A stretch of 64,000 nt of DNA from Diadema antillarum (taxonomy: Eukaryota): positions 1 to 64,000 of the forward strand of contig NW_027272988.1 in the NCBI RefSeq assembly GCF_040938485.1. The letters run 5' to 3'. Below are positions 7,001 to 54,567 of this stretch, one piece after another. A model generated the notes under the pieces. The model saw only the letters and a list, made by a program, of their open reading frames with translations. It was not told where the DNA came from and did no database searches. Every line of letters begins with the position of its first letter. Within the stretch, counting starts at the first letter, position 1. A program made the position numbers and the translations under genes.

Positions 7001-7615
7001 GTCACAAAGTGATGGATCAAATGACGTCTAAACAGTCACCTGGGATTTGGGGGCAATAAGCGTGCTGTTGAATATTCAACAGCAGCCTGAAGTTGCCTGC
7101 CGCCGTTTCAACTTGCGAAAGCTCCATGAATATATTTACAGGCCACCGTGACTGCAATATTTTTTCTCGTATGTGAAGTGAAGAAACAACGCTGAGAACA
7201 GTATTTTGTAAGAACGCGTAATACCAGCGAAAAAAAGGAAAGAGTAACAATTGAACAACCGAGGATATATTGCATCTTCTTTAATGAAATCAAGGAAAGC
7301 ACTTCACGGATTTACGTTCAGTTTTAACATCTTACGTAACTTGAAAAGGGCTGATCTGATACGATATGTGTGTGTCATTACCTTGTCATAGTCCATGAAT
7401 ATTTTCTCATGCACCATATAAGAACATTATGATAACGTTACACCGAGCCTCTTTGACGCTGTCATGTAGTTTTTGGAATACAACTACAATTTTTCTTCTG
7501 AGATGTGGAAGATAACACTGACCCTCGACAGAAAGGGGATTAATCTTACATAATGATTCAGGTTGACGATTTCATCATTTCATGAAAGACAACGAAAACC
7601 ATTTAACACAATGCA

Positions 7616-7655
<40 letters not shown>

Positions 7656-7708
7656 TGCATTGTGTTAAATGGTTTTCGTTGTCTTTCATGAAATGATGAA
7701 TTCGTCAA

Positions 7709-7746
<38 letters not shown>

Positions 7747-7799
7747 TGCATTGTGTTAAATGGTTTTCGTTGTCTTTCATGAAATGATGAATTCGTCAA

Positions 7800-7840
<41 letters not shown>

Positions 7841-10800
7841 TATATCTTATATATCCTATGAATGCATATATCGTATATGTGTAAATACAATGCTTGATGA
7901 CTGATGAAGCTATGTGAATTCACAGATATTCTTCACTTCGTTAATTGCCTTCGACACGGAGACACACAGACAGAACGACCTAATTTAATATAGACACACC
8001 TCACTAGCTTACGCTTTCCTCGAAATGTAGATGTAGATGTTATTAGGAAAATAAGGGAGACGTGCCTTTTTGAAAAGATAGGAAAAATAGTGGCTGATAT
8101 GAAGTGCAAAAAGTTTGCCATATAAACCTTGACCGTTTCCAGAACTGACGTTGACATTTCTTTCCTCCTACTACTATGTACTATGGGGGAAACTCGGTGA
8201 AAAAGCGAAAAAAGATAATAAGAAATAAACAAATACAAATGAATGAAATATTGAAATAATTGCGATAACAAGTAACAGTGCCCCTGTTTTCCTATTATGA
8301 CAATACGGCTTGTTCAAATTCCCTACTCTCGTATCGATGTTCCGTCTTTCCTTTTGTTTTCTGATAAAACATCGTATTGAAATAATGAACAAAATATTTC
8401 CATCAATGGACCTTTTTATCAGTGACGGATCGAGGGAGGGGGGGCGCTTCGGGCTCGCGCACCCCCTTTAATTTTGTTTTCCTTTAAAAAAGAATAAATA
8501 AACAGGAACAAAGGGGATGGTGCGTGCCCCCTTTAATATTTTGTTCCTTTATATACAATGTATATAAGTATGCATGAAATCGCAATACAATGTATATAAG
8601 TATGCATGAAATCGCACGATGACCAATATAAATATTGCTAAAAAAATAATAGAATCTCCCTACCGTGGGAAGGACACCTCCCTTGTCACCCGATTGTGTC
8701 AGAAAGTTGCCTCAGCTGATTAAACCCGGAAGTGGTACCAGAAACATAATTATACTTCCTTGCGCCCCCCCCCCCTTACGGAATTCCTGGATCCGCCCTA
8801 TTAGTTTTTCATTTGTCTGTTTGTTTTTGTAACTGAGATGTGCATATACAGACCTTTCAGAGTGCAATCTTTGCAGACAAGCAGTTCTTCCTTGTTGCCG
8901 AACTTATTACAGCTGGCGGGCAGGGTGCAGTAGTCGCATTTTTGGTCCCAAACGGATATTTTCACCACTGGTTCCTGCTCGAAATCGGGACCGTGCGTCT
9001 TCTTGATTCGCTGTAAGACATGAAAAAGAGGAAGAGAAACGTGTATAGAATTAACCATTATTCGTTCGACTTGTGAGAGAGAGAGTCACAACCTAACGCA
9101 CGTAAAAGATCCCACTCCATTCATTCATTCATTCATTCATCCCATCGAGCAGTGTGCATTATACCCCGTGAAGTGTTGCTGTAAACGTCGGTATTTTCGC
9201 GTGATTAATTTTTCGCGCTGAGCGGCTCAAAAACATTATTATTCGCGGGTTGTTGAATTCGCGCTGAGCAATAGTGAACTCATTCAAAATGAGTAGAGAA
9301 AATTGTGAATATATTCTCGGAGTTTTTAGATTTCGTACTAGCCAGTAGTAGCGCGAATTACACGAAAATTAATGTAACGCGAAAATTTCCAAGTTTACAG
9401 CAACAACTGGGCCCCATGGAAGACCAGCTAGTGCAGCTGGACACATTATGGGATATCCAGCCATCTTATAAGATGGAAAGTGAAAATAAAGAAACAAAAA
9501 CAAAAGCAAACTTGCTATATATAGGGCATGGTGTATGATTAAAGAGAATTAAATCGCACAATGAATCTCATGATAAGAGGAGGATGGGAGTAAAAAAAAA
9601 GGCAGCTGTAATGACATTCGTTGTATCTCTCAAAAAAAATGTGTCACGTCATCCATCACTTATTGGAATGACAGCAACCTTGGAATGCTGAAATACTACT
9701 ACATAATTTCTGTCAGAATTATCATCGCATGCGGTGGACTATGTTACGTTACCAAATAATTCAGTCTAGCTCTTTATTCTCCACATAATATTATTTTCAA
9801 AACTGCATAACTTGCGGCAAAAAGATGCAGAAACAAATGAACCAAAAGAAACAACAAGGAAACTTATTAGCACGGAGATAAAAAATGATTATCAGACATA
9901 TACTCCTACGAGTATTTTCATAGAAATTTGCGACCTACCTTCAGTATTCAGTTGATTTTGTTTTGAATTTGTGGGATCATTTTTTATTTTGCAAGAGTTG
10001 TTTCTTGAAATCCGTATAGCATATGGCTTTTAATGTCGAAAGGAAAATGCGGCAAAAATGCGAGCAAGCACGTGCACGTGACAGGAAGATGACACCTTTC
10101 CGCTTACATTATATTCATTTTGATTTCATTCGTTCTCATAAAGGAAAATGATGTAGCGGCGAGCTAGTGATTAAGACAGAATGGGGTGCGTGCAATCTCA
10201 TCTCATTGTGATGGAAGGAGAATTCATTCGGAATACCTTATATAGCGCCTCCTCTCCACCTTCCAAGAAATAAACGATTGCATCAATTAAAACGCACAAT
10301 ACAACGTTAACCCCACGCGCACACACGCATAATGATTAGGCCTACAGCAATTAAGCGAGCCATGTGCACCGTTACGCCCGGGCATGTGTATTATTGATAC
10401 ACAGCAGTCAGATTTTTTTTTTAAAGGACAAGTTCACCTTCATAAACATAAGGATTGAGAGAATGCAACAATATCAGTAGAACACATCAGTGAAAGTTTG
10501 AGGAAAATTGGACAATCGATGCAAAAGTTATGAATTTTTAAAATTTTTGTGTTGGAACCGCTGGATGAGGAGACTACTACAGCTTGTGAGTCATATGCGT
10601 ACAACAGTGTAAAGAAAATGTAAAAGAAAATTCAACATATTTTCACTTTTTTCGCATAATAAAAGAGCTCTTGACTTGCCTCTTTCTAAAGGCAGGGGGA
10701 ATAATATTACCCATAACATTTGTCGGTAACGAGTCAGGGGAATGTGTACTTTTTTCAAAAGATGGCATTTTGTGAAATTCTCTTTATATTTTCCTTATAT

Positions 10801-26407: not shown

Positions 26408-28482
26408 TGCTTGCTTGCTTGCTTGTTTAGCTGATGAAACCCGGAAGTGCCCCCCACCCACTTTGAAAATGTGGCGCCGGCCATGAGACAGGCACACATA
26501 CGCATAAACAGTATGTACTATACTATACTNNNNNNNNNNNNNNNNNNNNNNNNNNNNNNNNNNNNNNNNNNNNNNNNNNNNNNNNNNNNNNNNNNNNNNN
26601 NNNNNNNNNNNNNNNNNNNNNNNNNNNNNNNNNNNNNNNNNNNNNNNNNNNNNNNNNNNNNNNNNNNNNNNNNNNNNNNNNNNNNNNNNNNNNNNNNNAA
26701 AATAAGAACATTATAGGCCTGATGATATATGTCAATGTTATGTATTATACAATGTATATATTATATATGAATGTGCATGATCTAGCCAACACACCCAAGA
26801 GATTCATCGAAATAAGCGTAGCTGTACTCTTGCAACTTGACGCGCATGTTAAATGTGCCTCTATCTTATTGAATAGGCCTATATGCCCCACGTACATCGC
26901 TTTCACGGCGCTCGATCTGCAAAAGGCGATAGGTGCAGACGATAGAGATAGGTGATAATAATTATGTTTGACAATTTAACGCGCCGACTGAAGTTCTTGT
27001 CACTTTCGAAATTATGTCGCGAGGAAATGTGACGCAGGCGCACTTGTGTGTGAGCAGAAACCCAAACAAACGAAGAGAATGGTCAAGCATACCCAGAAGT
27101 ATAGTTAAGCGTGCGATAAGTCTTGCGGCCTGATTTCTGAATGTTGACAGTCTTGCGATGTTCGCCAGCATGCATAGCACGCACGGTTCTGATGCTGTCA
27201 TAAGAACGACTGAAGTTCATGTCGCCACGTGAAGTAGTAGGTCACGGCGCGAACTATAGTTCCCACCAGCACTGCTATTACTATGCGATCGACTATCAGA
27301 GCCACATAAGTTAATAACGTAGGCCTACCGATCACTGCGGACGAATCATGGCTCTGACATCAATACTGTTGACCTATCGCCCTTTAGTGAATCGGAAAAC
27401 TCACATGCCCCCCACCCCCCCCCCCCCCCCGTCACTCCATGTCATTATTACAGTAATCAAAATTACTATTACACTGTGTTATAATCTATCAAACGCGTAC
27501 GTTATCAATCCCTCGATCCGTCACCTCCATATAAGCACAATTTTTAATGTATGTCACTTCCGAGCTGTGGAGAATACTAGTAACCTTCGTCCGCGCTATT
27601 TGCCCCGGTGATTACACACGCAAAGGCAAGAGCGTGACGTAATGCGGGTCGTTCAACTATTGAATTGCATTTTTAAAGTTCATTATTGTCGCAGATAGAT
27701 GTTACGTGAGTTTATTATGATTGATCAATCTGCATCGGCATCCCTGGATGGCTTGTATAGTTCATTATGACCCAGCTCGCGCGCATTTGTGATATCAGTT
27801 TACAAAATGAAAAAAAAAAAACAGAACAAAACAAAGCAAAACAAAACAAAACGAAAAACACACAAACACCACGAACCTTCCGTTTCAAGGGCGGTCGCCC
27901 TCGCTTCACTTTCTGCGTGTTCTCGTTTTCATGGCTGTATACAATTTTTGCAAGGACATATCGACCCTCTTTGGCCGTGAAAATCCGTCCTGCACCAATT
28001 TCTCTCTTGATAGCCTCCTGCAGATAGCTTTGAGTGAATTTTGTGTCGGGGTCCTCATCAACGAAAAACTTCTCGATCTCCTCCAAAGTCGCTCCACCCT
28101 CTTCAGGCGCGCGGTCAGCTTTGCGAGGTTGAGGAAGACTTTGGGCCTGTCCCGAGCGAGTGGACTGATCGTCTTTGGCCGTTAGTTTCTCGATCGCAGC
28201 AAGAATAGCTCGCGTGGCATCGCTGGAATTGAGCTGAGATCCACTTAGGCGACTTCTGCACCATTTGGCGGCATTTCTGTAGCTGGTGTTACCTTTGTAA
28301 TCGACTTTGATGACGGTTTCCGCGTCCACCATTTGATTCAACTCCCGAATCACGTCCATGCTGCGAATGCCATTTTTACGCTCCACCATGTGACAAATTC
28401 GCTCCAAGTCGGGTCGAGCTTTGCGCTTTCGCAAAGAGTCAATGGCATCGAGAATCACAGCTTGGCTATTAACTGCAGCCAT
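4002..28482 (-). CDS. Inverted SAMD1/KAT6-N-terminus-like paralog: WH1 - WH2 - AT-hook - double PHD finger; exons 28482-27877, 9010-8854, 6970-6858, 5872-5791, 4183-4124 (or read-through to stop at 4002, 379 aa); no SAM seen
   Basis: Five GT-AG exons of 606, 157, 113, 82 and 60 nt, the same lengths and phases as the + gene, with open frames and all Cys/His ligands intact. The 3' end is uncertain. Confidence 0.85.
4124..4183 (-). CDS. Paralog exon 5 ([20 protein letters not shown]); may extend to stop at 4002
   Basis: ctacag| and |gtgaga, 60 nt. The frame stays open for about 40 more codons past the donor. Confidence 0.88.
5791..5872 (-). CDS. Paralog exon 4 ([27 protein letters not shown])
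   Basis: cttcag| and |gtaagg, 82 nt. Confidence 0.93.
6858..6970 (-). CDS. Paralog exon 3 ([38 protein letters not shown])
   Basis: ctttcag| and |gtgagt, 113 nt. Confidence 0.93.
7561..7838. repeat. (TA)n-centred palindrome with about 58-bp arms plus a third arm copy
   Basis: ggttgacga...aatgcatgca (TA)n tgcatgcatt...tcgtcaacc (TA)n, then the right arm again and (TA)n. Confidence 0.9.
8420..8800. mobile_element. hAT-like MITE (CAGTG[A/G]CGGATC...GGATCCGCCC family); related pieces at about 3270-3405 and 54886 onward
   Basis: Imperfect TIRs; the shared end ttacgg[a/g]attcctggatccgccc occurs at 3378-3402 and 8776-8798. Confidence 0.6.
8854..9010 (-). CDS. Paralog exon 2 ([52 protein letters not shown])
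   Basis: ttacag| and |gtctgt, 157 nt. Confidence 0.92.
9177..9402. mobile_element. Short MITE rich in TTTTCGCG/CGCGAAAA
   Basis: tgctgtaaac...ttttcgcg / cgcgaaaattt...gtttacagca. Confidence 0.65.
10421..10997. mobile_element. MITE with long TIRs (TTAAAGGACAAGTTCACCTTCAT...)
   Basis: Near-perfect inverted repeat over the first about 45 bp, imperfect beyond. Confidence 0.85.
11706..12149. mobile_element. Second, more decayed copy of the same MITE family
   Basis: ttaaaggtcaagttcaccttcat ... ctagtcctttaa; internal similarity to 10421-10997. Confidence 0.75.
12162..12392. mobile_element. Short MITE
   Basis: gacccaaattcacgaaggtggtttaaattta / taaatttaaaccaccttcatgaattcaggtc. Confidence 0.75.
19120..20086. 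mobile_element. Harbinger-like non-autonomous element, copy 1
   Basis: TIR gtgtcacacctttccgggcaag / cttgcccggaaaggtgtgacac, with a second internal left end near 19290. Confidence 0.75.
21343..22309. mobile_element. Harbinger-like non-autonomous element, copy 2 (made by the tandem duplication)
   Basis: Same TIRs at +2223. Confidence 0.75.
23799..24366. mobile_element. CACTCT...AGAGTG MITE nested in the piggyBac-like element
   Basis: After removing the inner MITE, cactct(t)aaatcatccgagtcagaactgacccggaa pairs with ttccgggtgagttctgaaccggatctttttagagtg. Confidence 0.7.
23804..24168. mobile_element. TTAAAGGGGATGGC MITE, innermost nested element
   Basis: Long near-perfect TIRs; a second copy lies at 45372-45804. 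Confidence 0.85.
26530..26698. other. Assembly gap (169 N) in intron 1 of the - paralog
   Basis: Run of N. Confidence 1.
27877..28482 (-). CDS. Paralog exon 1: WH1, WH2, AT-hook
   Basis: ATG at 28482 to AAG|GTTCGT, 202 codons; near-identical to + exon 1 over most of its length. Confidence 0.93.
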
Positions 28483-28625
28483 ATCAAATATTAGAATGTT
28501 TCAGAACTTGCCTGAAAGGACGTAAATTTGGGCGAAAATGATTATGCGTCTCTGTTTTTTTCTCTGAAAGCGCTTGTGTTCGGCCTAAGATCAGAACACG
28601 CACAGCACATGAAGCTGTTGCCTTT

Positions 28626-28753
28626 ACACACGCGTCCGCTCGTCATTGAATATATTACTCAAGCGGCGGCATGCGTGTAGTCAAACTGTAGTTGTATCGC
28701 AACGCTAAACATACACCAAAGTAGATCGAAGATTATTAGTGCGCATGCGTTGT
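28626..28753 (-). promoter_or_regulatory. Proximal promoter/5' region of - paralog, homologous to 34396-34547
   Basis: Shares ACAACGCATGCGCA, CTACTTTG, TTTAGCGT, GCCGCCGCT, TTCAATGACGAGC and CGCGTGTGT in the same order. Confidence 0.6.
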
Positions 28754-31700
28754 CTTCTGTTACTGCACGCTGAACTCCGAACACAGTGTATGCCCCGTTG
28801 CCCCAATAGCCTGAACTGTGTGTATGCCAGTAAATTCGTTTAGTTACATCGAGCTATATACTACACGGAACCTAAACGGCTTGACCAGGGTTCACGCAGG
28901 CTCTAACTTGACTATTGCGGAATCGATTTTCACCATAAAATTTGTTAGCGTAAAAACAGAGTAAATGCTCCCCACGTCAAAAACAAAACGGACAAAAGAA
29001 AATGTTGCATACAAGCGCGATTATCGCGAAACATTACAGGAACGTAAGCGAAAGCCATAGTCAGTGTCGAGAAAATATGTGATACTGAGGGATAACTCAT
29101 TACACACATGGGTCGATTCACCTATTTAATGATAATGTTGTGATATGTTTACATTTGAGAGCCCAACCAACCATTGGAAATACATATCTGTAACCTCTCA
29201 GATATTTTATGAACTAACGTGACGAGCAATTTGAAATTACGTCGTAGTGTATACGAGGCACAAGAGGTTTAGTGTTTCGGCTTTTGTTTTCCCTTCAACG
29301 CGCGCTTCGCACAAGCTCCTGAAACGGCAGACGACAGAGTACGGAATGTATGTAATTTACGAGATCGGTATTTTAACATATCTTGATATCGAGCCATTTA
29401 GACCCGCGCATCACCGCATGTGGATCAAACCAAAGAGCTTCAAACTCAATACATGTGTATCGTGAATGCCGTCTTCATGAGGCCATACGATGTGTGAGAG
29501 CCGCACGTTCCGTATGCAAGAATGCTTTTCTACGCCATACATCGTCACATTTAGGGTTATAGATGAATTGTATTGTTCATGAAAGTTTCACAGCCAATGC
29601 TGATACAGCATGCAGTAAATATGTTTCATAATGCCGTCATATGATGATGATGACACTGGTGATTATGAACGCTAAACTAACAGGCCTCATTATGTAGGCA
29701 TATAATATATTGAATTATGTCTTCAAGGGCGTGATAAAAAAGTTATCAACTGCTATTGCTATTGTAATTGAGTTAAATTCATATTTTGCTTGACGATTTA
29801 AACGGTAAGCACTTTTCATCGTTATCGGTAAGTGATGTATTTTTACACTTCACAATCAGTTACCCAACTTATTAAGACGGATAGTATTAAGTTCCCAGCA
29901 TAGGTGCCAATGTGCCTTTTTGTGCTATCGATTTTTCTCTCCATTACAAATAACCATGCATGATAGGAATTAGTTGCAGTGTGCGTATGTAGGATTTGAT
30001 CTGTGATTGGTCGAATTGCTACCACGTGATATTTATCAATACATTTGTATTTTTGAAGCGCACTATACAACCATAATTCGTACTTGTACAGAGCATCTCA
30101 TGTCAAAATGAGGAGGAACCGATGTCAAAGCATACACTTCATTTATCGCTATTTACTATAGCAGATGGTGCGCGGTCTGTTTCCAGTACATGTATATGCT
30201 TTATACATTAACGCATGGTAATACACATCGGATTCATAGAGTTATCTTTATGCGACTTCGTTTTTCACCGAGGCATGCAAATAATCTCGTACAGTGCATT
30301 CGAAAGGCATTATGACGTCAAGATGTGGTTGTGATTTTCATCACCGTCAAAGCCAATTTTGCAAACACCGTTCTGATGTCCATCAAGGCAAGGCGATAAA
30401 ACCTGCATGTTACGTAAGGACGCATGTAGGCATACAATGTCATGTAGGTATTAATGAAAGGTTAGTGAAGACTATAGCATACACCTATAGTCACACCAAT
30501 GTCCCGACCCAGACATGTTGCACCCAAGTTTGATGCTCCTAAATTGTATCATATACACATTGCAATAAGTCTATGTAAATCATTCATTGTACCTCTTTTA
30601 ATAGTATTTATGTGGTGTTGCGAAACAAAATGAGAAGCAGTGAATGATAACAAAACAACAGTAACAAAAATACAACTTTGATTTATTGCTTTGATTATAA
30701 TTTAGGTCTTACACGCCGTGGAATTCCAGTTGTATGAGTTTTCCGAATGGAAGAAGGATATTATTATGTTGATTTGGCCTTCAAAACTTTCAACAGGGCG
30801 AAAAATTCACATCTCTTGTTGTTACTAAAAAGTATACATGTCATGAACATTGTTAAGTCTTGTTGAGGTGGGTTTAACGATGTTCTGTTTCAACATATGT
30901 GAGTGCATATTGTGCCATGTAAAGAAGTTCATACAAAAATGACGCGTCAGAACTTGCTTTACACACGTATACATTATATATATAGAGAGGATAATAGCTA
31001 CTCTGATCACTATTCGATCTCTATTCACTGCTCGCATTTATTGCTTTGTTTAACAGTTTGATAATGTTTAATCTGATTTATTGTTTATGTTTGTTTTATA
31101 AACATTTATCTAAATCAACTGGAACATGGACTAAGTTTTCACGTCACTTGATAGTGGATATAAGCCTACTGCTCAGCAGTCATGCAAACATATAACAGAA
31201 AATTCCCATTGCGACACGAATTTTTTTTTTGATGACGAATGTTAGATGAGCATTGCCAGTTTTATAGGGTGTAAAAGACGGCTGTTTCAATGTAATGTTT
31301 TAAGTTGAATAGTTGGGAATTTTGAATGACATTAATTCATTAAAACGTAAGATCATGTTTATCACGATAAAGGCAATGGAATGGCAATTAAAGCAGCAAT
31401 GACTGATGTAATTCAACGATAACACCTTTCTGTGATTATAGATTGACCCATGGTGTGTGAGAAACCAAACAAAAATGAATATATTTTTAATTCAATTACA
31501 GGTTTTGCCAGTGTCAAACGCACTAAAAATGCAATGGAATAACGTACAATCGCAATTTAGACCCTATTACATGAATTCAAGTTTTTCAAAGCATACTTAA
31601 TAATTCCCAATTTGCCATTAAACTTGTAAAACAAAAGCAGAATAAGGAAAACAATTAAGATGCTAAGATAACACATTGTTTGATGTCTTCATGTCATTTA

Positions 31701-32553
31701 GCATTTGTTCTTTCGCTGTGCCTCAAAATAGTCGTTTTAATCTGTCATTTTTCTTTAATGCCTTGTATAAAAACCGCACGTTAGTTTTCTCTATTTATAG
31801 CGAAATTTTCGTGGCTATGATGATAATACTGCAAACTCATAGATTGTATGGTGCTTGCGACTTAGTAAGCCCGCTGAGCTTTTACTCATGGGGCAACATT
31901 CTATAGGTCATTATCTGACACTAAATTATGCAGCCTTCGCATTCTTGATTTGATCGCGTTAGCTTTGATTTTTACACCGATTGTGCGATTTCACTGAGCC
32001 GATTTCATTAAAAAAAAAACTTCTTGGCTTTCATTATACCTGTTCAGATTGATAGTATGCAATTACTCTTTTTTTTCTATGGCCGCTTGTTCATTTACTT
32101 TTCCATGAATTTCAAAATACTTCACGTAAAACGCGTTATTGCCTTCGAGAGATGTTCTGCCCAAACACTCTTGACGTCATAATGTTGTCTGCAATAAAGA
32201 CGCCGTTTGATATTGCCATGCTTATATGACATATAAACCGCGATCACTACGTGCTCTCTTGTTCCGCTTCGATTGCGCCGACGTGTAAATTCCCATGGCG
32301 CAACCCGCCTGATATTGCCTATCACGTGGAATAGTGTGGAAAGCCGTGGCGTGCTGTGTGTTCGTTTGTGTCGGCGTGGAAATGCACTTCGATATCATAG
32401 CGGATACCTTCCCCACTTGGACCGCAGGATGCCAGGCGACCCCGCGCGGGTTCACGTGGTTTGATGACGTAGACGCATAAGGATATGCGGGTCCAACGCA
32501 TGGACCACAAAGCAAGCCATCACACTTTGCGAGTATTGTGCTCGTGCCAGAAG

Positions 32554-32855
32554 CAGAGACTCCAACTCTCCCGTTTTCGACGGGAGATCTCCCGCCGAAA
32601 ACCCATTTTTGCAAAATCTCCCGTTCTCCCGTTTGAGATTTAATTTCTCCCGCCCTGGCTCAATGTCTCCAGTTGGAAAGGATTTCTTACTTATTGCTAT
32701 CATATGTTGCAAAAATAAGCCTTAGATAGCACCAGAGAGCATCTATAACCCAAGGAACTTCACGCTTCGCACACATAAACTTGGGTCTCCCGTTTGCTGG
32801 GGGTTTCAGGCGGGAGAATCTCCAGATCAGAAGGTGCTTGGGGTTGGAGTCTCTG
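32554..32855. mobile_element. hAT-like MITE with 6-bp target duplication CAGAAG
   Basis: cagaag|cagagactccaac ... gttggagtctctg|cagaag. Confidence 0.75.
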
Positions 32856-32973
32856 CAGAAGTGATTGTAACAAAAGACAATTAGGCCTACTACGTACCTT
32901 TCAGCTGTAGTTTATAGGAGTACAATAGCCTATGTAGTCTCAAAATGTGAGTTATTCTCGAAACAGAACCTCG

Positions 32974-33004
<31 letters not shown>

Positions 33005-34395
33005 GTTTTCCGTAAGATTAGCAAAGCACTTGAAAGAAACATCAACCTGGTTCAATTTGTGTAATTATACAAAACAATGTGCCTCCGTCCCTGTCCCCAC
33101 AAGGGGTTTGTATTACATACGAATGGTTTGTCAAAATGAATCGAAATTGAAATTGAAATTGAAGAATCCCGCCAATAATGAAAGGCCTTGGTCGAGGATT
33201 TGGCTCTCTAGATCATGAGCTTTCATCAAGGGAGGGGAAGTTATAATTATGTAATCAAGGTATTCGGTTGTTTGTGAGCATCGTCGAACAGAATGCTTAA
33301 TGAATTACGGGCACTGTTCAGTCATGCATGCACTGTAGTGTAGATCGTATGCTATAGCGGATGGTGAATTGGCAGGCCTAGGCCCCATAGGAATAACATG
33401 ACTGACTCGGCTTCCTCCTTGGTTTAACGTGGGGGTAGGCCCTTATATTGGTAGTTTTCGCCGGGAGTCGCAATGAAGTGACTAAAATAATGGTTATTGC
33501 TGCCGTTTTGACGATCGACCGCGCGTCCTCTGGCCACTATTGAGAATCGACCGTTACGAAGTGTTACTTATTGTCTGTTTAATTTTGCCATACTTGTCAC
33601 CGCTGAGAGCATGGAGTTAACAGGAAAATATAGCCCACATATAGGCTTCACCGTACACAAGACACCGTATTTGTAATAACAGTTACTGTTAGAAGCTGCG
33701 CAGAGCAGCTTAGTACAGCCTACTCGCCTGCGGAAAAAAAAGACAAAACAATCGGAACAGTACTAATATTGCCTCAAAGTACTGTTTTGACTAGGATGTA
33801 GAAAAGACAAAAATTATATTTCAGTGGTCATATCCCCACTCGAAAAAAAGACAACAATATCTCTGATATCCTGATGACTAACTGATCAGTCTATCGCCCC
33901 TGCTTGAAGCAATTCTGCATGGGAGATAAATCATATAAACTATAAGATAAGCATGGTAGTTTTCTTGCGTTGTGGAAATGAGCGAATGCTGTGGAGCTCA
34001 TTTGCAATGACGACAAAACGCAGTGAAGAACAAAAAAAAAAATGCACAGAGTTTACGATTTCGTTGTTCATAGCCTCTCACTCTCGCTTGGGTCGGGACA
34101 GTGTCCGCGTGTGATGTCGGGGAAGCTGAAAAATGAATGACCATCCACTCCTTTAGGGCCTATTACTATGTATAGTGGAGAACTTGACATTCTTTCGTCG
34201 TTTGGTAAAAGACTGGTGTATTTAGTGCATTCTTTATTTCTTGTTTTGCTCCGCAAGTGATAAAGTGAACGCAGATAGCAAGATTGCAGCTCCTCGCACT
34301 ACTACATTGTACTTAGTAATATTCGAGCGGCAAAACTCTTGTGATCCATGCCAGCTCACAGGCGATGAGCGTACACAGTTCAACGCCTGCAGTCC

Positions 34396-34547
34396 ACAAC
34401 GCATGCGCATTATTAATCTTCAAGCTACTTTGATGTATTTAGCGTGGAGGAGCGATCATGCAGTTTACAACACACGTACGCCGCCGCGTCGCGCCGCCGC
34501 TACAATAGTAATTTATTCAATTCAATGACGAGCTAGCCCGCGTGTGT
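34396..34547 (+). promoter_or_regulatory. Proximal promoter/5' region of + gene with NRF1-like GCATGCGCA and CRE-like TGACG
   Basis: CpG-rich; motif blocks are colinear with those upstream of the - paralog. Confidence 0.6.
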
Positions 34548-34699
34548 GTACTGAACCTTTAGCTAACATTATGGAACGCAACGACTATTACTATTAGGCG
34601 GCTTCGCGTGTTTACTTCATCTACAGAAAACAAGTATATAACTCAAGATTGACTTTTTGTCAACCTTAACTGTTGTTCTACTGGATTCTGATCGAAGAT

Positions 34700-35305
34700 A
34701 TGGCTGCGGTTGATCTTCAAGCTGTGATTCTCGATGCCATTGACTCTTTGCGAAAGCGCAAAGCTCGACCCGACTTGGAGCGAATTTGTCACATGGTGGA
34801 GCGTAAAAATGGCATTCGCAGCATGGATGTGATTCGGGAGTTGAATCAAATGGTGGACGCGGAAACCGTCATCAAAGTCGATTACAAAGGTAACACCAGC
34901 TACAGAAATGCCGCCAAATGGTGCAGAAGTCGCCTTAGTGGATCTCAGCTGAATTCTAGCGATGCCACGCGAGCTATTCTTGCTGCGATCGAGAAACTAA
35001 CGGCAAAAGACGAGTCTACTCGCTCGGGACAGGCCCAAAGTCTTCCTCAGCCTCGCAAAGCTGACCGCGCGCCTGAAGAGGGTGGAGCGACTTTGGAGGA
35101 GATCGAGAAGTTTTTCGTTGATGAGGACCCCGACACAAAATTCACCCACAGCTATCTGCAGGAGGCCATCAAACGAGAAGTCGGTGTAGGAAGTCTTCTT
35201 ATGTCTCAGAATGGCAATTACTTGCTGGCCAAATTGTCATCAAGAGATAAAATCGAGAACCACGTCCCAAAATCGAAACGAGGTCGCCCACCCTTGAAAC
35301 GAAAG
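34700..35305 (+). CDS. SAMD1: Exon 1: SAMD1-type winged helix WH1, KAT6-like WH2/H15 domain, AT-hook (KRGRPP)
   Basis: 606 nt = 202 codons from ATG to AAG|GTTGGT. The same donor position occurs in the - strand paralog. [11 protein letters not shown]...[15 protein letters not shown] resembles KAT6A WH2. Confidence 0.93.
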
Positions 35306-47300: not shown

Positions 47301-50108
47301 AGACTTGTTTATATGTTTTAGTGTTTTAGATCAATGTCAATAAGCGTTCTACATGACCCTCTTTTTGTGAAAAGAAAAACGAGAAATAATTGATGGCGTC
47401 TATTATCGGGTGTATATGAACTCCGTGTGCCACTTTATAGACTGTTTATGCGTTTTAATGCTGCGCGTACATTCAATGTTTATCAATTTTGAAATATCTT
47501 GTCCACAGAATCAACTTTTGTACTGTGCAAGGGAGTTTTTGCTTCAGAATGGAAGCGCTGTACAGGACAGAGAGTAGCAGCCGTGCTCCTACAACTCCGA
47601 CGACGACGGAGGCGAAACAATGGAAATATGATCTCGACATTCTATGAATAAACGATGGAATATAGTATATTTGCTCTACTCTCCTATAGCGAAGGATTCT
47701 TTTTACACGTTATGTCCATACATTCTCTCTTTTCTTTTCTTTTCTTTTTTTCTTGGGGGGGGGGGTCAAATTTTTCACTAATCAATGCATTTGGTTAATT
47801 ACTTATTCATGTGTTCCACATTGTTTTTGCGGAGCAGAAGCGAGGCATCGGCGTCATATTTCGTCGTCGTTGTTGTCGTCGGCGTCATCGGCGCTGTCAA
47901 CAAAGTAGTGTGCTCTCTCTAACTTTCCACAGCTTTGACCTATGACCACCAAACTCACACCACAGCTACATAACCTAAAAATGCCGGTCATTTTCGCACA
48001 TAGGTGAAGTTGGACAAGTTCAAAGGTCAAAAGGTCAATGAATTTGCCCTGATATGCAATCTACTCACAGGTTTGTCGTGTACTCCCAATGACTTTCCAT
48101 AGATTTAAGGCATGACTACCAAACTCACACCACAGGTGCCGGTATAGATGCCAACCAGGTGTGAATATGGGTGAAGTCCAACATGGTCAAAGTTCAAAAC
48201 GACAATGAACTTTCCTTGATAAGCTATATTCACAGCATCGTGGTATTTATGTACTCTCAATAACTTCCACAGATTTGAGCTATGGCCACCGAACTCACAC
48301 CAAATTAAGATGTCGGTCAAGGCCGAATATGAGTAGATTCGATGAGTAAGTTCAAAGGTCAAATGGTCAATGGTCGGTGAACTTTAAATGGTCAGCAATA
48401 TACACATAGTGCTGTGGTCTTTTCTCAATAACTTTCCACAGCCAGAGGTAGGACTGCATAACCTAAAGATGCCGGTCTGATCAAGTTCGAATATGGGTGC
48501 ATTCCAACAAAACTAAGTTCAAAGGTCAAAATAAACAATGAACTTTACCGGATAAGCACTTTACACATAGTGTGGTGTACTTTCAATAACTTTCCACATC
48601 TTTGAGCTATGACCACCTAATTCATACCACAGGTAGGCCTACATCATCTATAGAATATCAGTGAATTCCGATAAAAGGTCAAAAGGTCACTGAACTTATA
48701 AGGACTCTACTCACAGTATTGTGGTGTACTCTCAATTTCCACATCGTTGAGCTATAACGAATGAAAAATTCACACTACAGGTACATCACCGAAAGATCAT
48801 GTTGGTCGTAAGTACGAATATTGGTGAATGATTGTCAATGATAACAAGGTCAAAGGTCAAATTGTCACTGAACTTTCCCTGATAAGCACCATCCTTTGTT
48901 GTGTGCTCATACATGGTCAGGCTCAAATATTGGTGAAGTCGGACAAGGTCAAATGTAGAAAGGTCAATGAGCTTTCATTGAAAAACACTATAGAAATGCG
49001 ATATGCAGGCGAGACATCACTTGGCGTTTGCCTTGTTAGCCAAGTTGTACAGTGAAAAGCGGATTGTGTGAAGAATCTTGGAGATATATAAAATTGTGTT
49101 TCTATAAAGGAGTAGTAAAGCAAGTGTGATGCCGTAGTTATGCAATCGTCGTAAGAGACACCGCTCAAGAAATAAAGGTCGACAGTCCTTACTTCAAACG
49201 TTACGTGATTTCCCTCAATACCTCAAGGATAGGCCTAAGTTGAATTCATTCAGCCTCTTTGAAAATAACTTCTTTGGAAGCGTGTGTATAGGTTGGATTC
49301 CTCCAGACAAAAACATTTTCCTCTCACTTCACTGTAATTCACAAAAACCATACACTTTTTCAGTGTATGAGACGATTATACTTATTGCTTATAGAGACAA
49401 AAAGTAAGTTGACAGGATCTCACCCAGGGGCCACGGAACGTTTTTCAATGTGTGGCGGTTGTGGGCGGGATGAGAACAGGGGCAAGGCTCAATGGTGCCC
49501 CCAACACACACACACCTTTTCGGTTGGGGACGGAACCTTTGGAAAGTGTGGATATTATGTTTTTTTCCGCTATTATTTTACCGAACCCCCCCCCCCCCCA
49601 AAAAAAAAAAAAAAGAATGGGGGGGGGGGGGAGGGGCGTTGAGGGCTCAACCTTCTTCACGTATAAATCGTTACCAAACAAAAACATTCTTTTCGTGTAC
49701 GCCCGGCCTGTTTTCTGTCAATCTATATCTATATATCTATTGATCTATTTATACATTTATCTGTCTATGTTTCTCTGCATTATGATATTATCATACAGCG
49801 TCTCAAAAAGACACACGGACCCGACTTCGAGCAGGAACCGCTGGTGAAAACGCCGCCGTCTGATCTAAACTGCGATTACTGCTCACTTCCCTCAAGCTGT
49901 AACAAGTCAGGAAAGAGAGAAGAACTGCTCGTCTGCAAAGATTGCGGTCTGAAAGGTGGGTGTCTTCCCTATATAGAGATTCGTTGAACAATTCAGTCAC
50001 TATTATTTATTTGTCTGCTTGGCTTCTGTTTTCCATTCCTCGGTGTGCGCTTGGTAAGACAGAAGCGCCGACATGGTAGCGGTGCATTCAGTTCAATTCC
50101 ATTTTATA

Positions 50109-50155
<47 letters not shown>

Positions 50156-50522
50156 TTGTCATTGTTACCGGTGCATTTTTTTAAATGTGAGCTCAAATTG
50201 TAGCATTTTTTTTTCATTGTAAGCAAACAAAATACATGTGTATATACCTATACTCACAATAGTTGTGATGGTAATTGATCAATATCGAAATTACAGTTCA
50301 GGTTGTGCAAATATTAGAGGACCAGTATGACCGCGAAAGGGTGCTACATAAAAGTAAGCTTGTGTGGCTGCAAGTCACAAATAATTGGCGGTTATGACAA
50401 ACAAAACAAAACAAAATAAAACAAAGCAAAACAAATGACGAAGAGAAAATTAAAAGTTTAAACCAGATCGAATAATAACATCAAATAAGGAGAATGATAT
50501 ATGGCCTATATACGGTATACAT

Positions 50523-50574
<52 letters not shown>

Positions 50575-53500
50575 CAAAGATGAACCACAATTGTGACCTT
50601 ATAGTTTTCATTTACTTTCAGAATTGGACATGGTTATTGTTTATTTACGTGCTTTGGTGTTAGCGAGAATGTTTTTGCATTAGAACTATACTGGTATTTG
50701 TATTAGCTTATCATCAACCATGTGAGTAGATGGTAACATGCAATATAGGGCCTACTCGTATGTTGCATGGTTGATATGAATAACACCAGAAACTGAGATC
50801 AAAGTATGCGCTAGCAAATTAAATAGGAATGATAGTATGTCATACTTCGAAAGCATGATACGAGTACGAATGTCATAACATCAGAAGTTTGTGTGTATAG
50901 GCTCGTGGTAGGTGAGGAATCATTATCGTGCGAGTTTTTCCTACATGCACTATGTACAATATCGGTTCCTTCGTAAAAGTGAATACACGTGGTAGACGTC
51001 GCTTTCCATAATGATAGCTACTGATAAAGCTTCCGGCAAGAATAGATGACTTAAATTTTAGACCATGTAGGCCTATGAAACCAATTTAACATTAAACAAA
51101 TATGAATTGACAAATCGGGGTTCTTGGAGAAAGATCAATTTCATGTTGGTATGGGCCCAATTTGCAAAAATGTAATGTACTTCACAAGAGTTGCAGTTTC
51201 CAATACATGTATTTACAGTTACAAACTTGTCATTAGGCGACGACCAATCAGCCAACATCATTGATATTTGTCGCCGATGATTAATGCACCCCCTTCAATA
51301 TCTACACACGTCTTTAACAAATCAGCTCCAGTTTTTCTTTTTTATAAAAATTTCCAATTTGTAATCGCAGCTTGAAGATGGACATGGCAGCTGAAGATAT
51401 AGTGTAAATCAGTGTCTCGGTACAAGATCACAGTGAATGAAGAAATTGAAAATGACACAGCAAGGCTTTCTGAAGTTTATTTCAATTTAATATTATCATA
51501 AAAACACCATGATGAAGTCATGACCTGGAAGTTAATTGAGTTCGATATGCCGCGCCTGTGTGTATTTGTATATCAATTAATGAGGATGATTAATTAAATC
51601 TCACGTAATTTTCTCTGATATTAATGTTTTAATTACCTTTCAGTTCATCCGTCGTGCATGAAGTATTCCAAGGAACTTGCCGAGCGATCACGACTATCGC
51701 CGTGGCAGTGTATCGATTGCAAGACGTGTCACGTGTGTAAAGAAGCAGGAGACGCAGTAAGAATGCAAACTCAAATTTCCATTAAATTGATACATTAATT
51801 AAATGTACAATGTCTCTTTGAATATCTAATTCTATGATGTTGCTTCCGGAATTGAAAGTGACTGTATGTAAGTATAGTAACATAAATGTTCCCTTCACAG
51901 TCTTTGATAGTTTACTTAGTTTAGTTTTACGTAGGATTATATTTCCATGAAAATATTTGTCTTAAGCATTTATGCTCTTTAGGATATGCAAAAGGATCCA
52001 ACAATATCAAAACATTTTAAAACTCCCCACAATATTCGAAAATAAGCCAAAATACGTGGCAATGCCACTATCATTAAAGTTTGAATGGCTTTCGTGAGCA
52101 GTGGTCTCATGGAATGATTTCTATAAGACTTTGTCCATGACCAAGAAAAATGGTTTCTGGTGTGTATCCATGGAAATGTGATCTGATTTTCATAACTTGC
52201 AGGAGGTGTTCGAAAAAATAGAGATGGCACGCCGGACCGCGTCATTGTTGATTTTCCAATGATATCGGAATATTCGTACCAGTGAGGTACCTTGTTCGTA
52301 TGTATCATGAAGGTGTTTACCGCCATTAATTTCACTATGGGAAAAACATCTCTCTTTATACAACAGTTGAATAATGAAGAGTTTCCCCTCAATGATGCCA
52401 TACAGCATGTGTCTTTAGCTTCCTAAAGGGTATAGATTTATCAATAATGTGAAAATAGAATATATCACATCATTACCACGTGAGGTTTTGGGGCAAACAC
52501 AGAGAAAAAAGGATATACTTACAGATCTATCTTCCCATGTGAATATAGTGGATTGATAGTGACTTAAGGATTACGGTTCGATATTCGAGGTTCGAACGCC
52601 TGAAAATTAAGTAATGTTCGTTGACTTGGGTCACAGGTCGTTTCTCGAGGTCGATAGCCTTGAAAACGAAGTAAGATTCGTTATTCCGAAGGTTTGTTCG
52701 TCCGAAAAAGAAGTTAGTTTTGTTAATCTGAACCCTACTTCACTTTCGGACTATCGAAACTTAACTAACCTTATTTCATTTTTGGATTAGCAAACCTTCA
52801 GAATGACGAGCCTGGGATTTCATTTTCGGACTAACAAATCTTCGAAATGACGCCATAAATGTTCGAATTATTGAACCCCATTTCATTTTCGGACTAACGA
52901 AGATCTTGGTATATAGGCTTACGGAAATTGTGAGATTCGGAATAACGCACCTTTGGCCTTGGGAATAACGAATATCACCCCTGACTTGAACCAAGGAGGT
53001 ACTAGGCGAGCTCACCTATACAGTACCTCCTTGCTTGAACCAGCCTTTCACGTAGAACTTAAGAGATTTGTGGTTACAACTTCTACAATGTATATCATAC
53101 TTCTTGTTTGCATGTGTACTTTTCAAGGATACTCTACTTTTCTGTGATTCCTGCGACAAGGGATACCACATGGCGTGCCATACTCCGACTGTTGAAGAGA
53201 AACCGCACGGTAAGAGAATCCAATCTATTCTTGCTTTGGATTGAACAGGAAAACTGCGGCAGACAGTCCGCGTGTAGTATACTGCCATGACAATATTCAT
53301 GAAGGCAGAAGCGGGTGGCTTGATATAATGACCTCGAAGAATTATCGAATCACAGTAATTCAGAATTTGGCCGATCATGTTTTTAGTAATTAGGGAATCG
53401 CATAGTCGTACACAAATATACGTTTTTGTACGAGTTGAGATTACGCAGTTTAATTACAACAGTCAGTGACTAATGAGAATACTGAAGAGATCGAGCTATA

Positions 53501-54567
53501 CTGTGTGTAGATTCGTATAGTTTCTATACTATGGATAACGCGCCCGGCTAAGGTGAGTGGAGCATATAACTGTAATATCACGACTCGACATGCTTTATAA
53601 GCCGTTAATTGCAACTATTAGGCCTATTCAGTGAGAAGTTACAAAACTGTAGGCCTCCATGGCATGGCATCTTATGTGGTGAATTCGTAGGAACCCGTGA
53701 GCGTTCATCCTTCGGACTTTTGTCACTTGTAGTTTGTAATCTTGGCCGTGATGGCAGCTCTGGCTGTATGACAAAATGACTACTAGTAATATATCAGCCA
53801 CGGAAGTTATTTACGCAACGATGGGTAAATGTCTCGTTTTCATCGTTTGCAGGGACTTGGGTGTGTGAGCCTTGCGCCAGCGAAGACATGGAGGTCAAAA
53901 GTACAAGTACAGGTGAGAAAACTGCCAAAGGAATTCTTGAACCATGAGCATGCTAGCATGACAAATTTCTCTCGTCTGTATCTAAGCGCACGTTGTAGTG
54001 CGCTTCTTCTTTGGTCTGTATGTTTATGTTGTGTATAATTTGCGTGAGCGAGTAATTTAGTTACGGCCTCTCCTCGTAGTGTTTTCCCCTGGGATTATTT
54101 GTGTGACATGGGCGTGATATTCTGGAGGAGCAATTAACAGATCCTCTATTCATTTTGTGATCAAATGGAAGCGATAACATTAGATGAAATCCTGTTGTAT
54201 GCAGTATTACTCTCGAAGAAGTTATAATCAAATAAATGAACCTTTACGAATAATGTGCTGTCTACAGCATCATGGTTATTGTGATCAGTTTTCATTTTAA
54301 GAACTGGAAGTTAGAAATAAGCTGAATTAATTAGTACGAAATACTGGTAATTTCTCTGATCTCAGTTTTCAATGAAATTGCATTGATTTCATTAGCTCAT
54401 TTCAGATAAATATATCTGTACGGATTCTTTATTCATTCAGTTCGACCTATGCACGCCATTTTGCAAAGTTTGTTCCAAATTTCTTATTCATGGGACCCTA
54501 AACTCTTTCGTGTTGATCATTCGATTTATGTATCGGTAGACTTAGTTAGACTTAAGTGTGTGTGTTA

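What the first reader, a model, noticed from the sequence alone, without database searches (positions are those of the whole stretch)
28013..35166. Gene-conversion tract homogenising the DNA-binding domains across the inverted pair
Seen: 34718-35166 (+) and 28013-28464 (-) differ by about 9 substitutions and one 3-bp indel in about 450 nt (about 98%). The first codons, the last about 45 codons of the same exon, and exons 2-5 are far more diverged (exon 3 is 84% identical; exon 2 is lower). Boundaries are sharp and lie inside the exon. Inference: recent or recurrent ectopic conversion between inverted repeats 6.2 kb apart keeps WH1 and most of WH2 the same, while the PHD fingers and C-termini evolve separately. 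The two proteins would target the same DNA sites with different effector ends.
Basis: partly seen in the sequence, partly recalled or inferred. Interest (0 to 1): 0.8.

Follow-up and report, generated by a model that had tools for sequence, protein, structure and literature searches.

The report
Gene-conversion patch between inverted SAMD1-like genes
Two old, head-to-head copies of a SAMD1-like chromatin-reader gene share about 430 bases of their first exon that stay almost identical through DNA copying between them (gene conversion), which is a clean example of an ordinary, well-known process.

Summary
34718-35166 (+) and 28013-28464 (-) differ by 9 substitutions and one 3-bp indel. Inside the tract (codons 7-149 of a 202-codon first exon) dS is 0.09; everywhere else in the two genes it is about 1.4, which is saturated (0 of 1000 permutations match).

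The pattern is not an assembly artefact:
- It recurs on a second, 1-8% diverged copy of the whole locus in the same assembly (contig C50), probably the other haplotype.
- It recurs in an independent individual.
- It recurs in a closely related organism, where the 3' edge lies about 20 nt further on.

Interlocus gene conversion between inverted paralogs 6.2 kb apart is the best explanation, and it probably happened more than once.

- The tract covers the CpG-reading winged helix WH1 and the linker. It covers only the first part of WH2, and stops before WH2's last helix and wing.
- Both genes keep the same architecture: WH1, an H15-like WH2, an AT-hook, a double PHD finger and a SAMD1-type SAM domain.
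- The minus gene's SAM exons exist, but lie beyond the window's left end.

No GC-biased signature was found. The scan has already noted similar patch-wise conversion in other gene clusters of this genome. This is a new member of a known kind, of modest interest.

The parts
34700..35305 (+). Exon 1 of the plus paralog (202 codons): SAMD1-type winged helix WH1 (residues 6-70), linker helix, H15-like WH2 (about 128-178), AT-hook-like [10 protein letters not shown]; GT donor at 35306
27877..28482 (-). Exon 1 of the minus paralog (202 codons), same layout; GT donor at 27876
34718..35145 (+). Converted tract in the plus copy (CDS nt 19-446, codons 7-149). In the related organism B the identity runs on to 35166
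28034..28464 (-). Converted tract in the minus copy (CDS nt 19-449, with the 3-bp ATC insertion).
28483..34699 (.). 6.2-kb spacer between the two divergently transcribed genes. It is unalignable between the arms except for short conserved blocks, and has the same orientation on both haplotype contigs
34396..34445 (+). Conserved upstream block with an NRF1/P3A2-like palindrome CGCATGCGCA, about 86% identical to 28702-28753 (-). Further shared blocks (GCCGCCGCT, ATTCAATGACGAGC) lie nearer the ATG. Probably promoter elements
28702..28753 (-). Counterpart of the conserved upstream block in the minus gene
49799..53912 (+). Exons 2-5 of the plus gene (49799-49955, 51644-51756, 53128-53209, 53853-53912) encoding the double PHD finger. 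They are 79-85% identical to the minus copy, with dS saturated
4124..9010 (-). Exons 2-5 of the minus gene (9010-8854, 6970-6858, 5872-5791, 4183-4124) encoding the double PHD finger
56125..57185 (+). Two SAM exons of the plus gene (56125-56316 and 56922-57185 including the stop). They match residues 2-29 and 30-61 of the SAMD1 SAM crystal structure. The link from exon 5 (phase 1) to 56125 (phase 0) is unresolved

Best explanation
Two old paralogs of a SAMD1-like chromatin reader sit head to head, with start codons 6.2 kb apart. Each encodes WH1, an H15-like WH2, an AT-hook, a double PHD finger and a SAM domain.

The duplication is ancient: synonymous sites are saturated and introns and flanks are unalignable. 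A stretch of about 430 nt in exon 1 (codons 7-149) has nevertheless been overwritten by non-reciprocal copying between the two copies. This is interlocus gene conversion during repair of a break, with the inverted paralog on the same chromatid or on the sister as template.

At least part of the tract was homogenised very recently. There are no fixed differences in CDS nt 19-236 or 355-449. Four fixed substitutions and a 3-bp indel cluster in nt 237-354. The 3' edge differs between two closely related organisms. More than one event is therefore likely.

Inferred from what is generally known about recombination (my own knowledge):
- Exon 1 is converted because, at 606 nt and 6.2 kb from its partner beside the promoters, it is the only block of homology that is long and near enough.
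- Exons 2-5 are 60-157 nt long, at least 40 kb apart, and embedded in unalignable introns.
- Once established, the identity perpetuates itself. The diverged flanks, and possibly selection on the diverged half of WH2, stop the tract from spreading.

Consequence: both proteins carry an identical WH1. By homology to SAMD1 and KAT6A this domain reads unmethylated CpG. The proteins differ in the C-terminal half of WH2 and, moderately, in the PHD and SAM parts.
For: - Sixteen-fold dS contrast: 0.089 in the tract against about 1.4 outside. In the PHD exons the protein is conserved but synonymous sites are saturated, so protein constraint cannot explain the DNA identity.
- Permutation and Fisher tests are strongly significant.
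- The genome holds only four copies of the tract: two paralogs on each of two collinear contigs that are 1-8% diverged. No third donor exists.
- Both contigs show the same tract and the same four fixed differences plus the indel. Their private polymorphisms differ: 34828 and 34951 in the window's plus copy, and the site equivalent to 35017 in its minus copy.
- Allelic synonymous diversity inside the tract (pS 0.010-0.021) is about the same as in the other exons (0-0.025). Synonymous sites in the tract are therefore not unusually constrained.
- Independently assembled contigs from four public runs place graph branch points exactly at 34718 and at 35146-35167. An independent individual (X2) keeps both variants at 35005, the ATC indel, 35017 and 35050.
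- In organism B, 31-mers link plus-type C at 35146 and 35149 to minus-type sequence from 35167 onward. The identity therefore ends about 20 nt later there than in organism A.
- The fixed differences cluster: p about 0.02 that five events fall within 118 of 431 nt.
Against: - No GC3 or CpG excess in the tract (GC3 0.53-0.55 against 0.50-0.62 elsewhere), so there is no GC-biased conversion signature.
- The classic test could not be run. That test asks whether the tract groups by species and the flanks by paralog in an outgroup carrying both genes. The closest proteins in the database are only 52% identical.
- Organism B was seen only through bubble-popped contigs. Whether its two copies differ inside the tract is unknown.
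- The boundary shift rests on two sites 3 nt apart. A single multi-nucleotide mutation in organism A's minus copy could also produce it.
- Whether C2100 and C50 are haplotypes or a very recent segmental duplication is inferred, not shown.
Confidence: 0.87

Rival explanations
1. A single conversion event some time ago, followed only by mutation. The central cluster of differences and the boundary shift would be chance or a multi-nucleotide mutation. Conversion would then be neither recurrent nor ongoing.
For: The tract-wide paralog pS (0.05-0.08) is 3-5 times the allelic pS, so the last tract-wide event is not extremely recent. All three polymorphic sites are derived singletons that need no conversion. 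The clustering p-value is only about 0.02.
Against: There are no fixed differences in 313 nt of the tract, but four plus an indel in the central 118 nt. The 3' edge differs between organisms A and B.
Confidence: 0.25
2. Assembly or polishing cross-talk: reads of one copy were used to correct the other, creating false identity.
For: Inverted repeats with 98% identity are a known trap for polishing. Run X1 is probably the source sample, so it is not independent.
Against: The same tract, edges and diagnostic differences appear on a second contig of the assembly. They also appear in de Bruijn contigs of an independent individual from another study, and in two samples of a related organism. Both sets of flanks join the tract in every run. 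The differences retained inside the tract argue against wholesale overwriting.
Confidence: 0.02
3. Nucleotide-level purifying selection keeps both copies identical, for example through an embedded RNA element, an antisense transcript or extreme codon bias, without any copying between them.
For: The tract lies at the 5' end of both genes next to conserved promoter blocks. No GC-biased conversion signature was found.
Against: Synonymous polymorphism between haplotypes is as high inside the tract as outside it. All 8 within-tract substitutions on the window haplotype but one are synonymous. Other strongly conserved protein parts of the same genes have saturated dS. No Rfam or structure search was run on the tract.
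Confidence: 0.03

Closest known systems
Interlocus (ectopic) gene conversion between closely spaced inverted paralogs, as surveyed in Caenorhabditis, Drosophila and mammals (PMC3966223, PMC3924832, PMC2720389)
   Same: A patch with near-identical synonymous sites sits inside otherwise anciently diverged duplicates. It has sharp edges, the copies are a few kb apart, and conversion is confined to the longest homology block.
   Different: No GC-biased signature was detected. The tract ends inside a protein domain (WH2). Evidence for recurrence comes from two haplotype contigs and a sister organism, not from a phylogeny.
SAMD1 (atherin), the vertebrate reader of unmethylated CpG islands (PMC8115922; PDB 6LUI, 6LUJ, 6LUK)
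   Same: - N-terminal WH: Pfam PF21524 E = 2.5e-28, 55% identity to 6LUI, TM-score 0.91.
- 8 of 9 DNA-contact residues are conserved.
- The C-terminal SAM domain matches the SAMD1 SAM structure across its two exons.
   Different: The genes here also carry an H15-like second winged helix, an AT-hook-like motif and a double PHD finger between WH and SAM. Arg56 of SAMD1 is His here, and His at this position is invariant in the invertebrate homologs. Two copies are present.
N-terminus of KAT6A/KAT6B (MOZ/MORF): WH1, WH2, double PHD finger (PMC9881136, PMC9908889)
   Same: The same order of WH1, H15-like WH2 and double PHD finger. WH1 belongs to the same subfamily (36% identity to 7Y43 and 8H7A).
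   Different: No MYST acetyltransferase domain lies on this contig or its haplotype partner. The genome's KAT6-like gene is elsewhere: on C1305, a distant WH1 at about 30 kb and a MYST domain at about 150 kb. A SAM domain stands at the C-terminus instead.

Membership tests
Interlocus gene-conversion tract | A segment whose divergence, including synonymous sites, is far lower than in the flanking homologous sequence of the same paralogs | tested here: met
   dS 0.089 against about 1.4. 98% identity against 64-85%.
Interlocus gene-conversion tract | The segment is longer or cleaner than chance allows (GENECONV-type permutation) | tested here: met
   0 of 1000 permutations reach the observed chi-square. 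Identical runs of 95-110 nt against at most 78 in 5000 permutations.
Interlocus gene-conversion tract | The tract groups by species while the flanks group by paralog in related species | tested here: inconclusive
   Only a very close relative (organism B, about 1.3-2% diverged) was reachable, and only as bubble-popped contigs. It shows the same tract with a shifted 3' edge. No outgroup carrying both paralogs was found.
Interlocus gene-conversion tract | Real in the DNA of the organism, not an assembly artefact | tested here: met
   Seen on a second contig, in an independent individual and in a related organism.
Interlocus gene-conversion tract | GC-biased signature (frequent but not obligatory) | tested here: not met
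   GC3 is 0.53-0.55 in the tract and 0.50-0.62 elsewhere.
SAMD1-like winged-helix proteins (Pfam PF21524) | Match to the family profile above the curated cut-off | tested here: met
   97.6 and 98.5 bits against a 24.5-bit cut-off, for both paralogs.
SAMD1-like winged-helix proteins (Pfam PF21524) | Fold and DNA-contact residues of the SAMD1 WH domain | tested here: met
   AF2 model against 6LUI: TM-score 0.91, rmsd 0.7 A. R18, R20, K21, R23, Y62, K63, S67 and R69 align with SAMD1 R43, R45, K46, R48, Y87, K88, S92 and R94. R56 is replaced by H31.
SAMD1-like winged-helix proteins (Pfam PF21524) | Binding to unmethylated CpG (GCGC) DNA | not testable with these tools
   Needs EMSA, protein-binding microarray or DAP-seq.
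SAMD1 orthologs (WH plus SAM) | C-terminal SAMD1-type SAM domain in the same gene | tested here: inconclusive
   The SAM exons match SAMD1 SAM residues 2-29 and 30-61. They lie downstream on the same strand in both paralogs. The splice link from exon 5 has a phase mismatch and no RNA run was available.
KAT6 / MOZ-MORF acetyltransferases | MYST (MOZ_SAS, PF01853) catalytic domain | tested here: not met
   24 MYST exon matches in the genome, none on C2100 or C50.

The most novel reading that the evidence does not exclude
The homogenisation may not be a passive by-product. Selection may keep the CpG-reading WH1 of the two paralogs identical while letting WH2's DNA-facing half diverge. The two proteins could co-polymerise through their SAMD1-type SAM domains. 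They would then read the same CpG sites with different secondary DNA contacts. Separately, the WH1, WH2, double PHD finger, SAM architecture would mark an ancestral form linking SAMD1 and the KAT6 N-terminus.
Probability: 0.12. Interest if true: 0.55.

Novelty: new member of a known kind. Interest (0 to 1): 0.3.

Why it matters
The case shows how conversion can hold one domain of an old duplicate pair in lockstep for a long time while the rest diverges. Anyone dating this duplication, or building trees of SAMD1/KAT6-type winged helices, would be misled by exon 1. The locus also documents an invertebrate SAMD1-like architecture with an H15-like domain and a double PHD finger, which bears on the shared origin of the SAMD1 and KAT6 CpG-reading modules. 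As a mechanism it is textbook, and the scan has already recorded comparable patches elsewhere in this genome.

Tried and rejected
- **GC-biased conversion signature.** Not found.
- **Cross-species tree test.** The word-based protein search with exon 1 gave nothing closer than 52% identity. Full-length relatives fall outside its length band.
- **DPF and SAM exons next to distant homologs.** I looked within 10 kb of them on contigs L016, L018 and L019 and found none. Their first introns are probably long.
- **A parallel case in another animal.** L016 against L017 shows only a weak dip in pS over WH1 (0.22-0.46 against 0.69). The two come from different samples, so this is not usable.
- **RNA evidence.** No RNA run holds the stretch. 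The gene model downstream of exon 5 stays open.
- **Pfam on single short exons.** Only the PHD exon 4 scored. Concatenated exons were used only inside local scripts, to count substitutions.
Rejected: its SAM exons lie beyond the window's left end on contig C50.
- **KAT6 membership.** Rejected: no MYST domain at the locus.
- **A second conversion tract in the SAM exon.** Rejected: 85.8% identity, similar to exon 3.
- **Inversion of the spacer between haplotypes.** Not seen.
- **N run 26530-26698.** Left untouched.
Full report
**1. Observation**

- Each arm is the first coding exon of a gene. The plus exon is 34700-35305 and the minus exon is 28482-27877. Each is 606 nt (202 codons) and ends at a GT donor.
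- From CDS nt 19 to 449 the copies in the window differ by 7 substitutions and a 3-bp ATC indel.
This gives the reported 9 substitutions and about 98% identity.
- Codons 1-6 carry 5 differences.
- The last 157 nt of the exon carry 57 substitutions.
- The remaining exons were located by blastn of one half of the window against the other. They are 79-85% identical; exon 3 is 84.9%.

**2. Statistics**

| Region | dS | dN |
|---|---|---|
| Tract (codons 7-149) | 0.089 | 0.003 |
| Rest of exon 1 | 1.16 | 0.287 |
| PHD exons | 1.0 to unmeasurable | 0.03-0.16 |

- These are Nei-Gojobori estimates.
- In the PHD exons the protein is conserved but the synonymous sites are saturated. Protein constraint therefore cannot explain the DNA identity of the tract.
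- A maximum chi-square scan of third codon positions picks codons 7-148. Its chi-square is 66, against at most 27 in 1000 permutations. The Fisher test gives p = 5e-18.
- Identical runs of 95-110 nt exceed the maximum of 78 seen in 5000 permutations.

**3. The genes**

WH1 (residues 6-70):
- It is a SAMD1-type winged helix: Pfam PF21524 at 98 bits, 55% identity to the SAMD1 WH-DNA crystal structure 6LUI, and an AF2 model that superposes on 6LUI with TM-score 0.91.
- Eight of the nine SAMD1 residues reported to contact DNA (PMC8115922, read) are conserved. They are identical in both paralogs.

The rest of exon 1:
- A helix (71-108) and a disordered loop follow WH1.
- The second domain has helices at 132-142 and 150-163 and a beta hairpin at 166-176. 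It aligns with the stretch that Pfam calls Linker_histone in homologs P0003, P0004 and P0020.
- The exon ends in an AT-hook-like [10 protein letters not shown].

Downstream exons:
- Exons 2-5 encode a double PHD finger (exon 4 hits Pfam PHD).
- Two further exons of the plus gene (56125-56316 and 56922-57185) match residues 2-29 and 30-61 of the SAMD1 SAM domain structures 6LUJ, 6LUK and 8Y77.
- Exon 5 ends in phase 1 and the first SAM exon starts in phase 0. An intervening exon or an alternative donor is therefore missing from the model. No RNA run was available to resolve this.

Searches were done exon by exon, by reference. Concatenated exons were used only in local scripts to count substitutions.

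No MYST domain lies at this locus. The genome's KAT6-like gene is on contig C1305, where a distant WH1 (34% identity) lies about 120 kb upstream of a MYST domain.

**4. Domain boundaries against the tract**

The tract covers all of WH1, the linker helix and loop, and the first helix of WH2. It ends at codon 149, just before WH2's last helix and wing. That C-terminal half of WH2 is the most diverged protein segment of the pair (29 non-synonymous differences in 54 codons). 'WH1 and most of WH2' is therefore an overstatement.

**5. A second copy of the locus**

- The assembly has 1.75 Gb in 2963 contigs. The window is C2100:1-64000.
- Contig C50 (3.77 Mb) holds the whole 64-kb region again, in reverse orientation. 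It is collinear, 92-99.8% identical and has many indels.
- Several other genes in the assembly also appear as contig pairs. I therefore read C2100 as the alternative haplotype of C50. This is an inference.
- Only four copies of the tract exist in the genome.
- The spacer has the same orientation on both contigs.

Variation across the four sequences:
- Fixed paralog differences inside the tract are confined to CDS nt 237-354: four substitutions and the indel.
- nt 19-236 and 355-449 carry only private singletons. These are 34828 T and 34951 G in the window's plus copy, and the C at the site equivalent to 35017 in the window's minus copy.
- The chance that five events fall within 118 of 431 nt is about 0.02.
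- Allelic synonymous diversity is 0.010-0.021 inside the tract and 0-0.025 outside it. Synonymous sites in the tract are thus free to vary, which argues against nucleotide-level selection.

**6. The minus gene is not truncated**

On C50, beyond the point where the window begins, the minus gene has both SAM exons. They are 85.8% and 78.8% identical in DNA to the plus gene's SAM exons. The SAM exon's identity is in the range of exon 3, so it is not a second young tract.

**7. Public reads**

Nine of the 15 listed runs hold the 8-kb stretch or part of it, and two of them hold half or more of its words. X1 and X2 are organism A, from two studies. X3 to X7 are organism B and hold about 16% of the words. 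Contigs of X1-X4 were laid on 34300-35700.

- In every run, two different upstream contigs (plus-type and minus-type) end at 34747 with the shared overlap 34718-34747. The 5' edge of identity is therefore the same in both organisms.
- X2 is an independent individual of organism A. It keeps separate contigs for the plus and minus variants at 35005, the ATC indel and 35017. It also has a minus-type contig with T at 35146 and A at 35149 that runs on into the minus copy's own sequence. This excludes a polishing artefact.
- In organism B the tract is one 443-449-nt contig (34718-35160 or 35166). Its word depth is above that of either single-copy flank (114 against 60-70 in X3).
- In organism B, the contig that continues into minus-type sequence carries the plus-type C at 35146 and 35149. 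Identity therefore extends about 20 nt further in B than in A.
- Caveat: these contigs pop bubbles. X1 shows none of the known paralog differences. The state of B's two copies inside the tract cannot be read, so I draw no conclusion from its apparent mosaic of letters.
- Plus-flank divergence between A and B is about 1.3-2%, similar to the divergence between haplotypes within A. A species-tree test would therefore have little power.

**8. Mechanism**

Shown:
- A patch of near-identity that includes synonymous sites lies inside anciently diverged inverted paralogs.
- It is real in several individuals.
- It has an internal mosaic and an edge that differs between lineages.

Inferred:
- The patch arose by non-reciprocal repair (gene conversion) between the inverted first exons, and more than once.
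- Exon 1 is the only homology block that is both long (606 nt) and near its partner (6.2 kb, beside the promoters). Exons 2-5 are 60-157 nt long and at least 40 kb apart, within unalignable introns.
- That conversion needs a minimal stretch of homology and falls off with distance is general knowledge about recombination, not something I tested here.
- No GC-biased signature was seen.
- Whether selection helps to keep WH1 identical, or keeps the diverged half of WH2 from being overwritten, is open.

**9. Comparison with the known**

Patch-wise interlocus conversion in close, often inverted, duplicates is well documented (PMC3966223, PMC3924832, PMC2720389; found). Earlier notes of this scan describe similar patches in TLR, pmar1, MGST and IL-17 clusters of the same genome. 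They name the genome as the sea urchin Diadema antillarum, which I did not verify. The finding is a clean new instance of a known process in a gene family where it had not been noted.

**10. Verdict**

- The conversion reading is supported (confidence about 0.87); recurrence is probable.
- The functional gloss is only partly supported.
- Interest is modest.

Noticed in passing
window 34396-34445 (+) and 28702-28753 (-); further blocks up to about 150 nt upstream of each ATG: The otherwise unalignable upstream regions of the two genes share short conserved blocks. One is a roughly 60-nt block with the palindrome CGCATGCGCA (NRF1/P3A2-like). The others are GCCGCCGCT and ATTCAATGACGAGC. All are identical on both haplotype contigs. 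They are probably shared promoter elements kept by selection rather than by conversion (about 86% identity).
   Followed up: partly
G000:C50, about 2344600-2345400 (beyond the window's left end): The SAM exons of the minus paralog lie outside the window on the other haplotype contig. The window's contig C2100 starts inside this gene, so the window truncates it.
   Followed up: yes
window 53912 / 56125: There is a phase mismatch between exon 5 and the first SAM exon. Exon 5 has a strong conserved donor, CAG|GTGAGA, in phase 1; the SAM exon starts in phase 0. Either an undetected small exon or an alternative donor (GAG|GT, present in both paralogs) is needed. A short isoform without SAM is possible.
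   Followed up: partly
window 23803-24173 and 45366-45805: A near-perfect 370-nt palindromic (foldback or MITE-like) element, 89% self-complementary, sits in intron 1 of the minus gene. A related copy sits in intron 1 of the plus gene.
   Followed up: partly
window 32553-32855: About 300 nt in the spacer have no collinear counterpart on C50. They match C50 at a site roughly equivalent to window 54.3 kb, at 92% identity. This looks like a haplotype-specific insertion of a repeat.
   Followed up: no
G000:C1305:30192-30563 and 149911-152612 (haplotype partner C1563): A distant SAMD1-type WH1 (34% identity) lies about 120 kb upstream of a MYST domain on the same strand. This is probably the genome's KAT6 (MOZ/MORF/Enok) ortholog.
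   Followed up: partly
L016:1-189 and 5825-6403; L017:447-1253: In an unrelated marine metagenome contig, a homologous exon 1 has a second partial copy 5.8 kb upstream in direct orientation, 96.9% identical over 189 nt. A related exon from another sample shows lower pS over WH1 (0.22-0.46) than elsewhere (0.69). Local duplication of this gene may recur in other animals.
   Followed up: partly
window 26530-26698: A run of 169 N (assembly gap or masked stretch) in intron 1 of the minus gene. It was left untouched.
   Followed up: no
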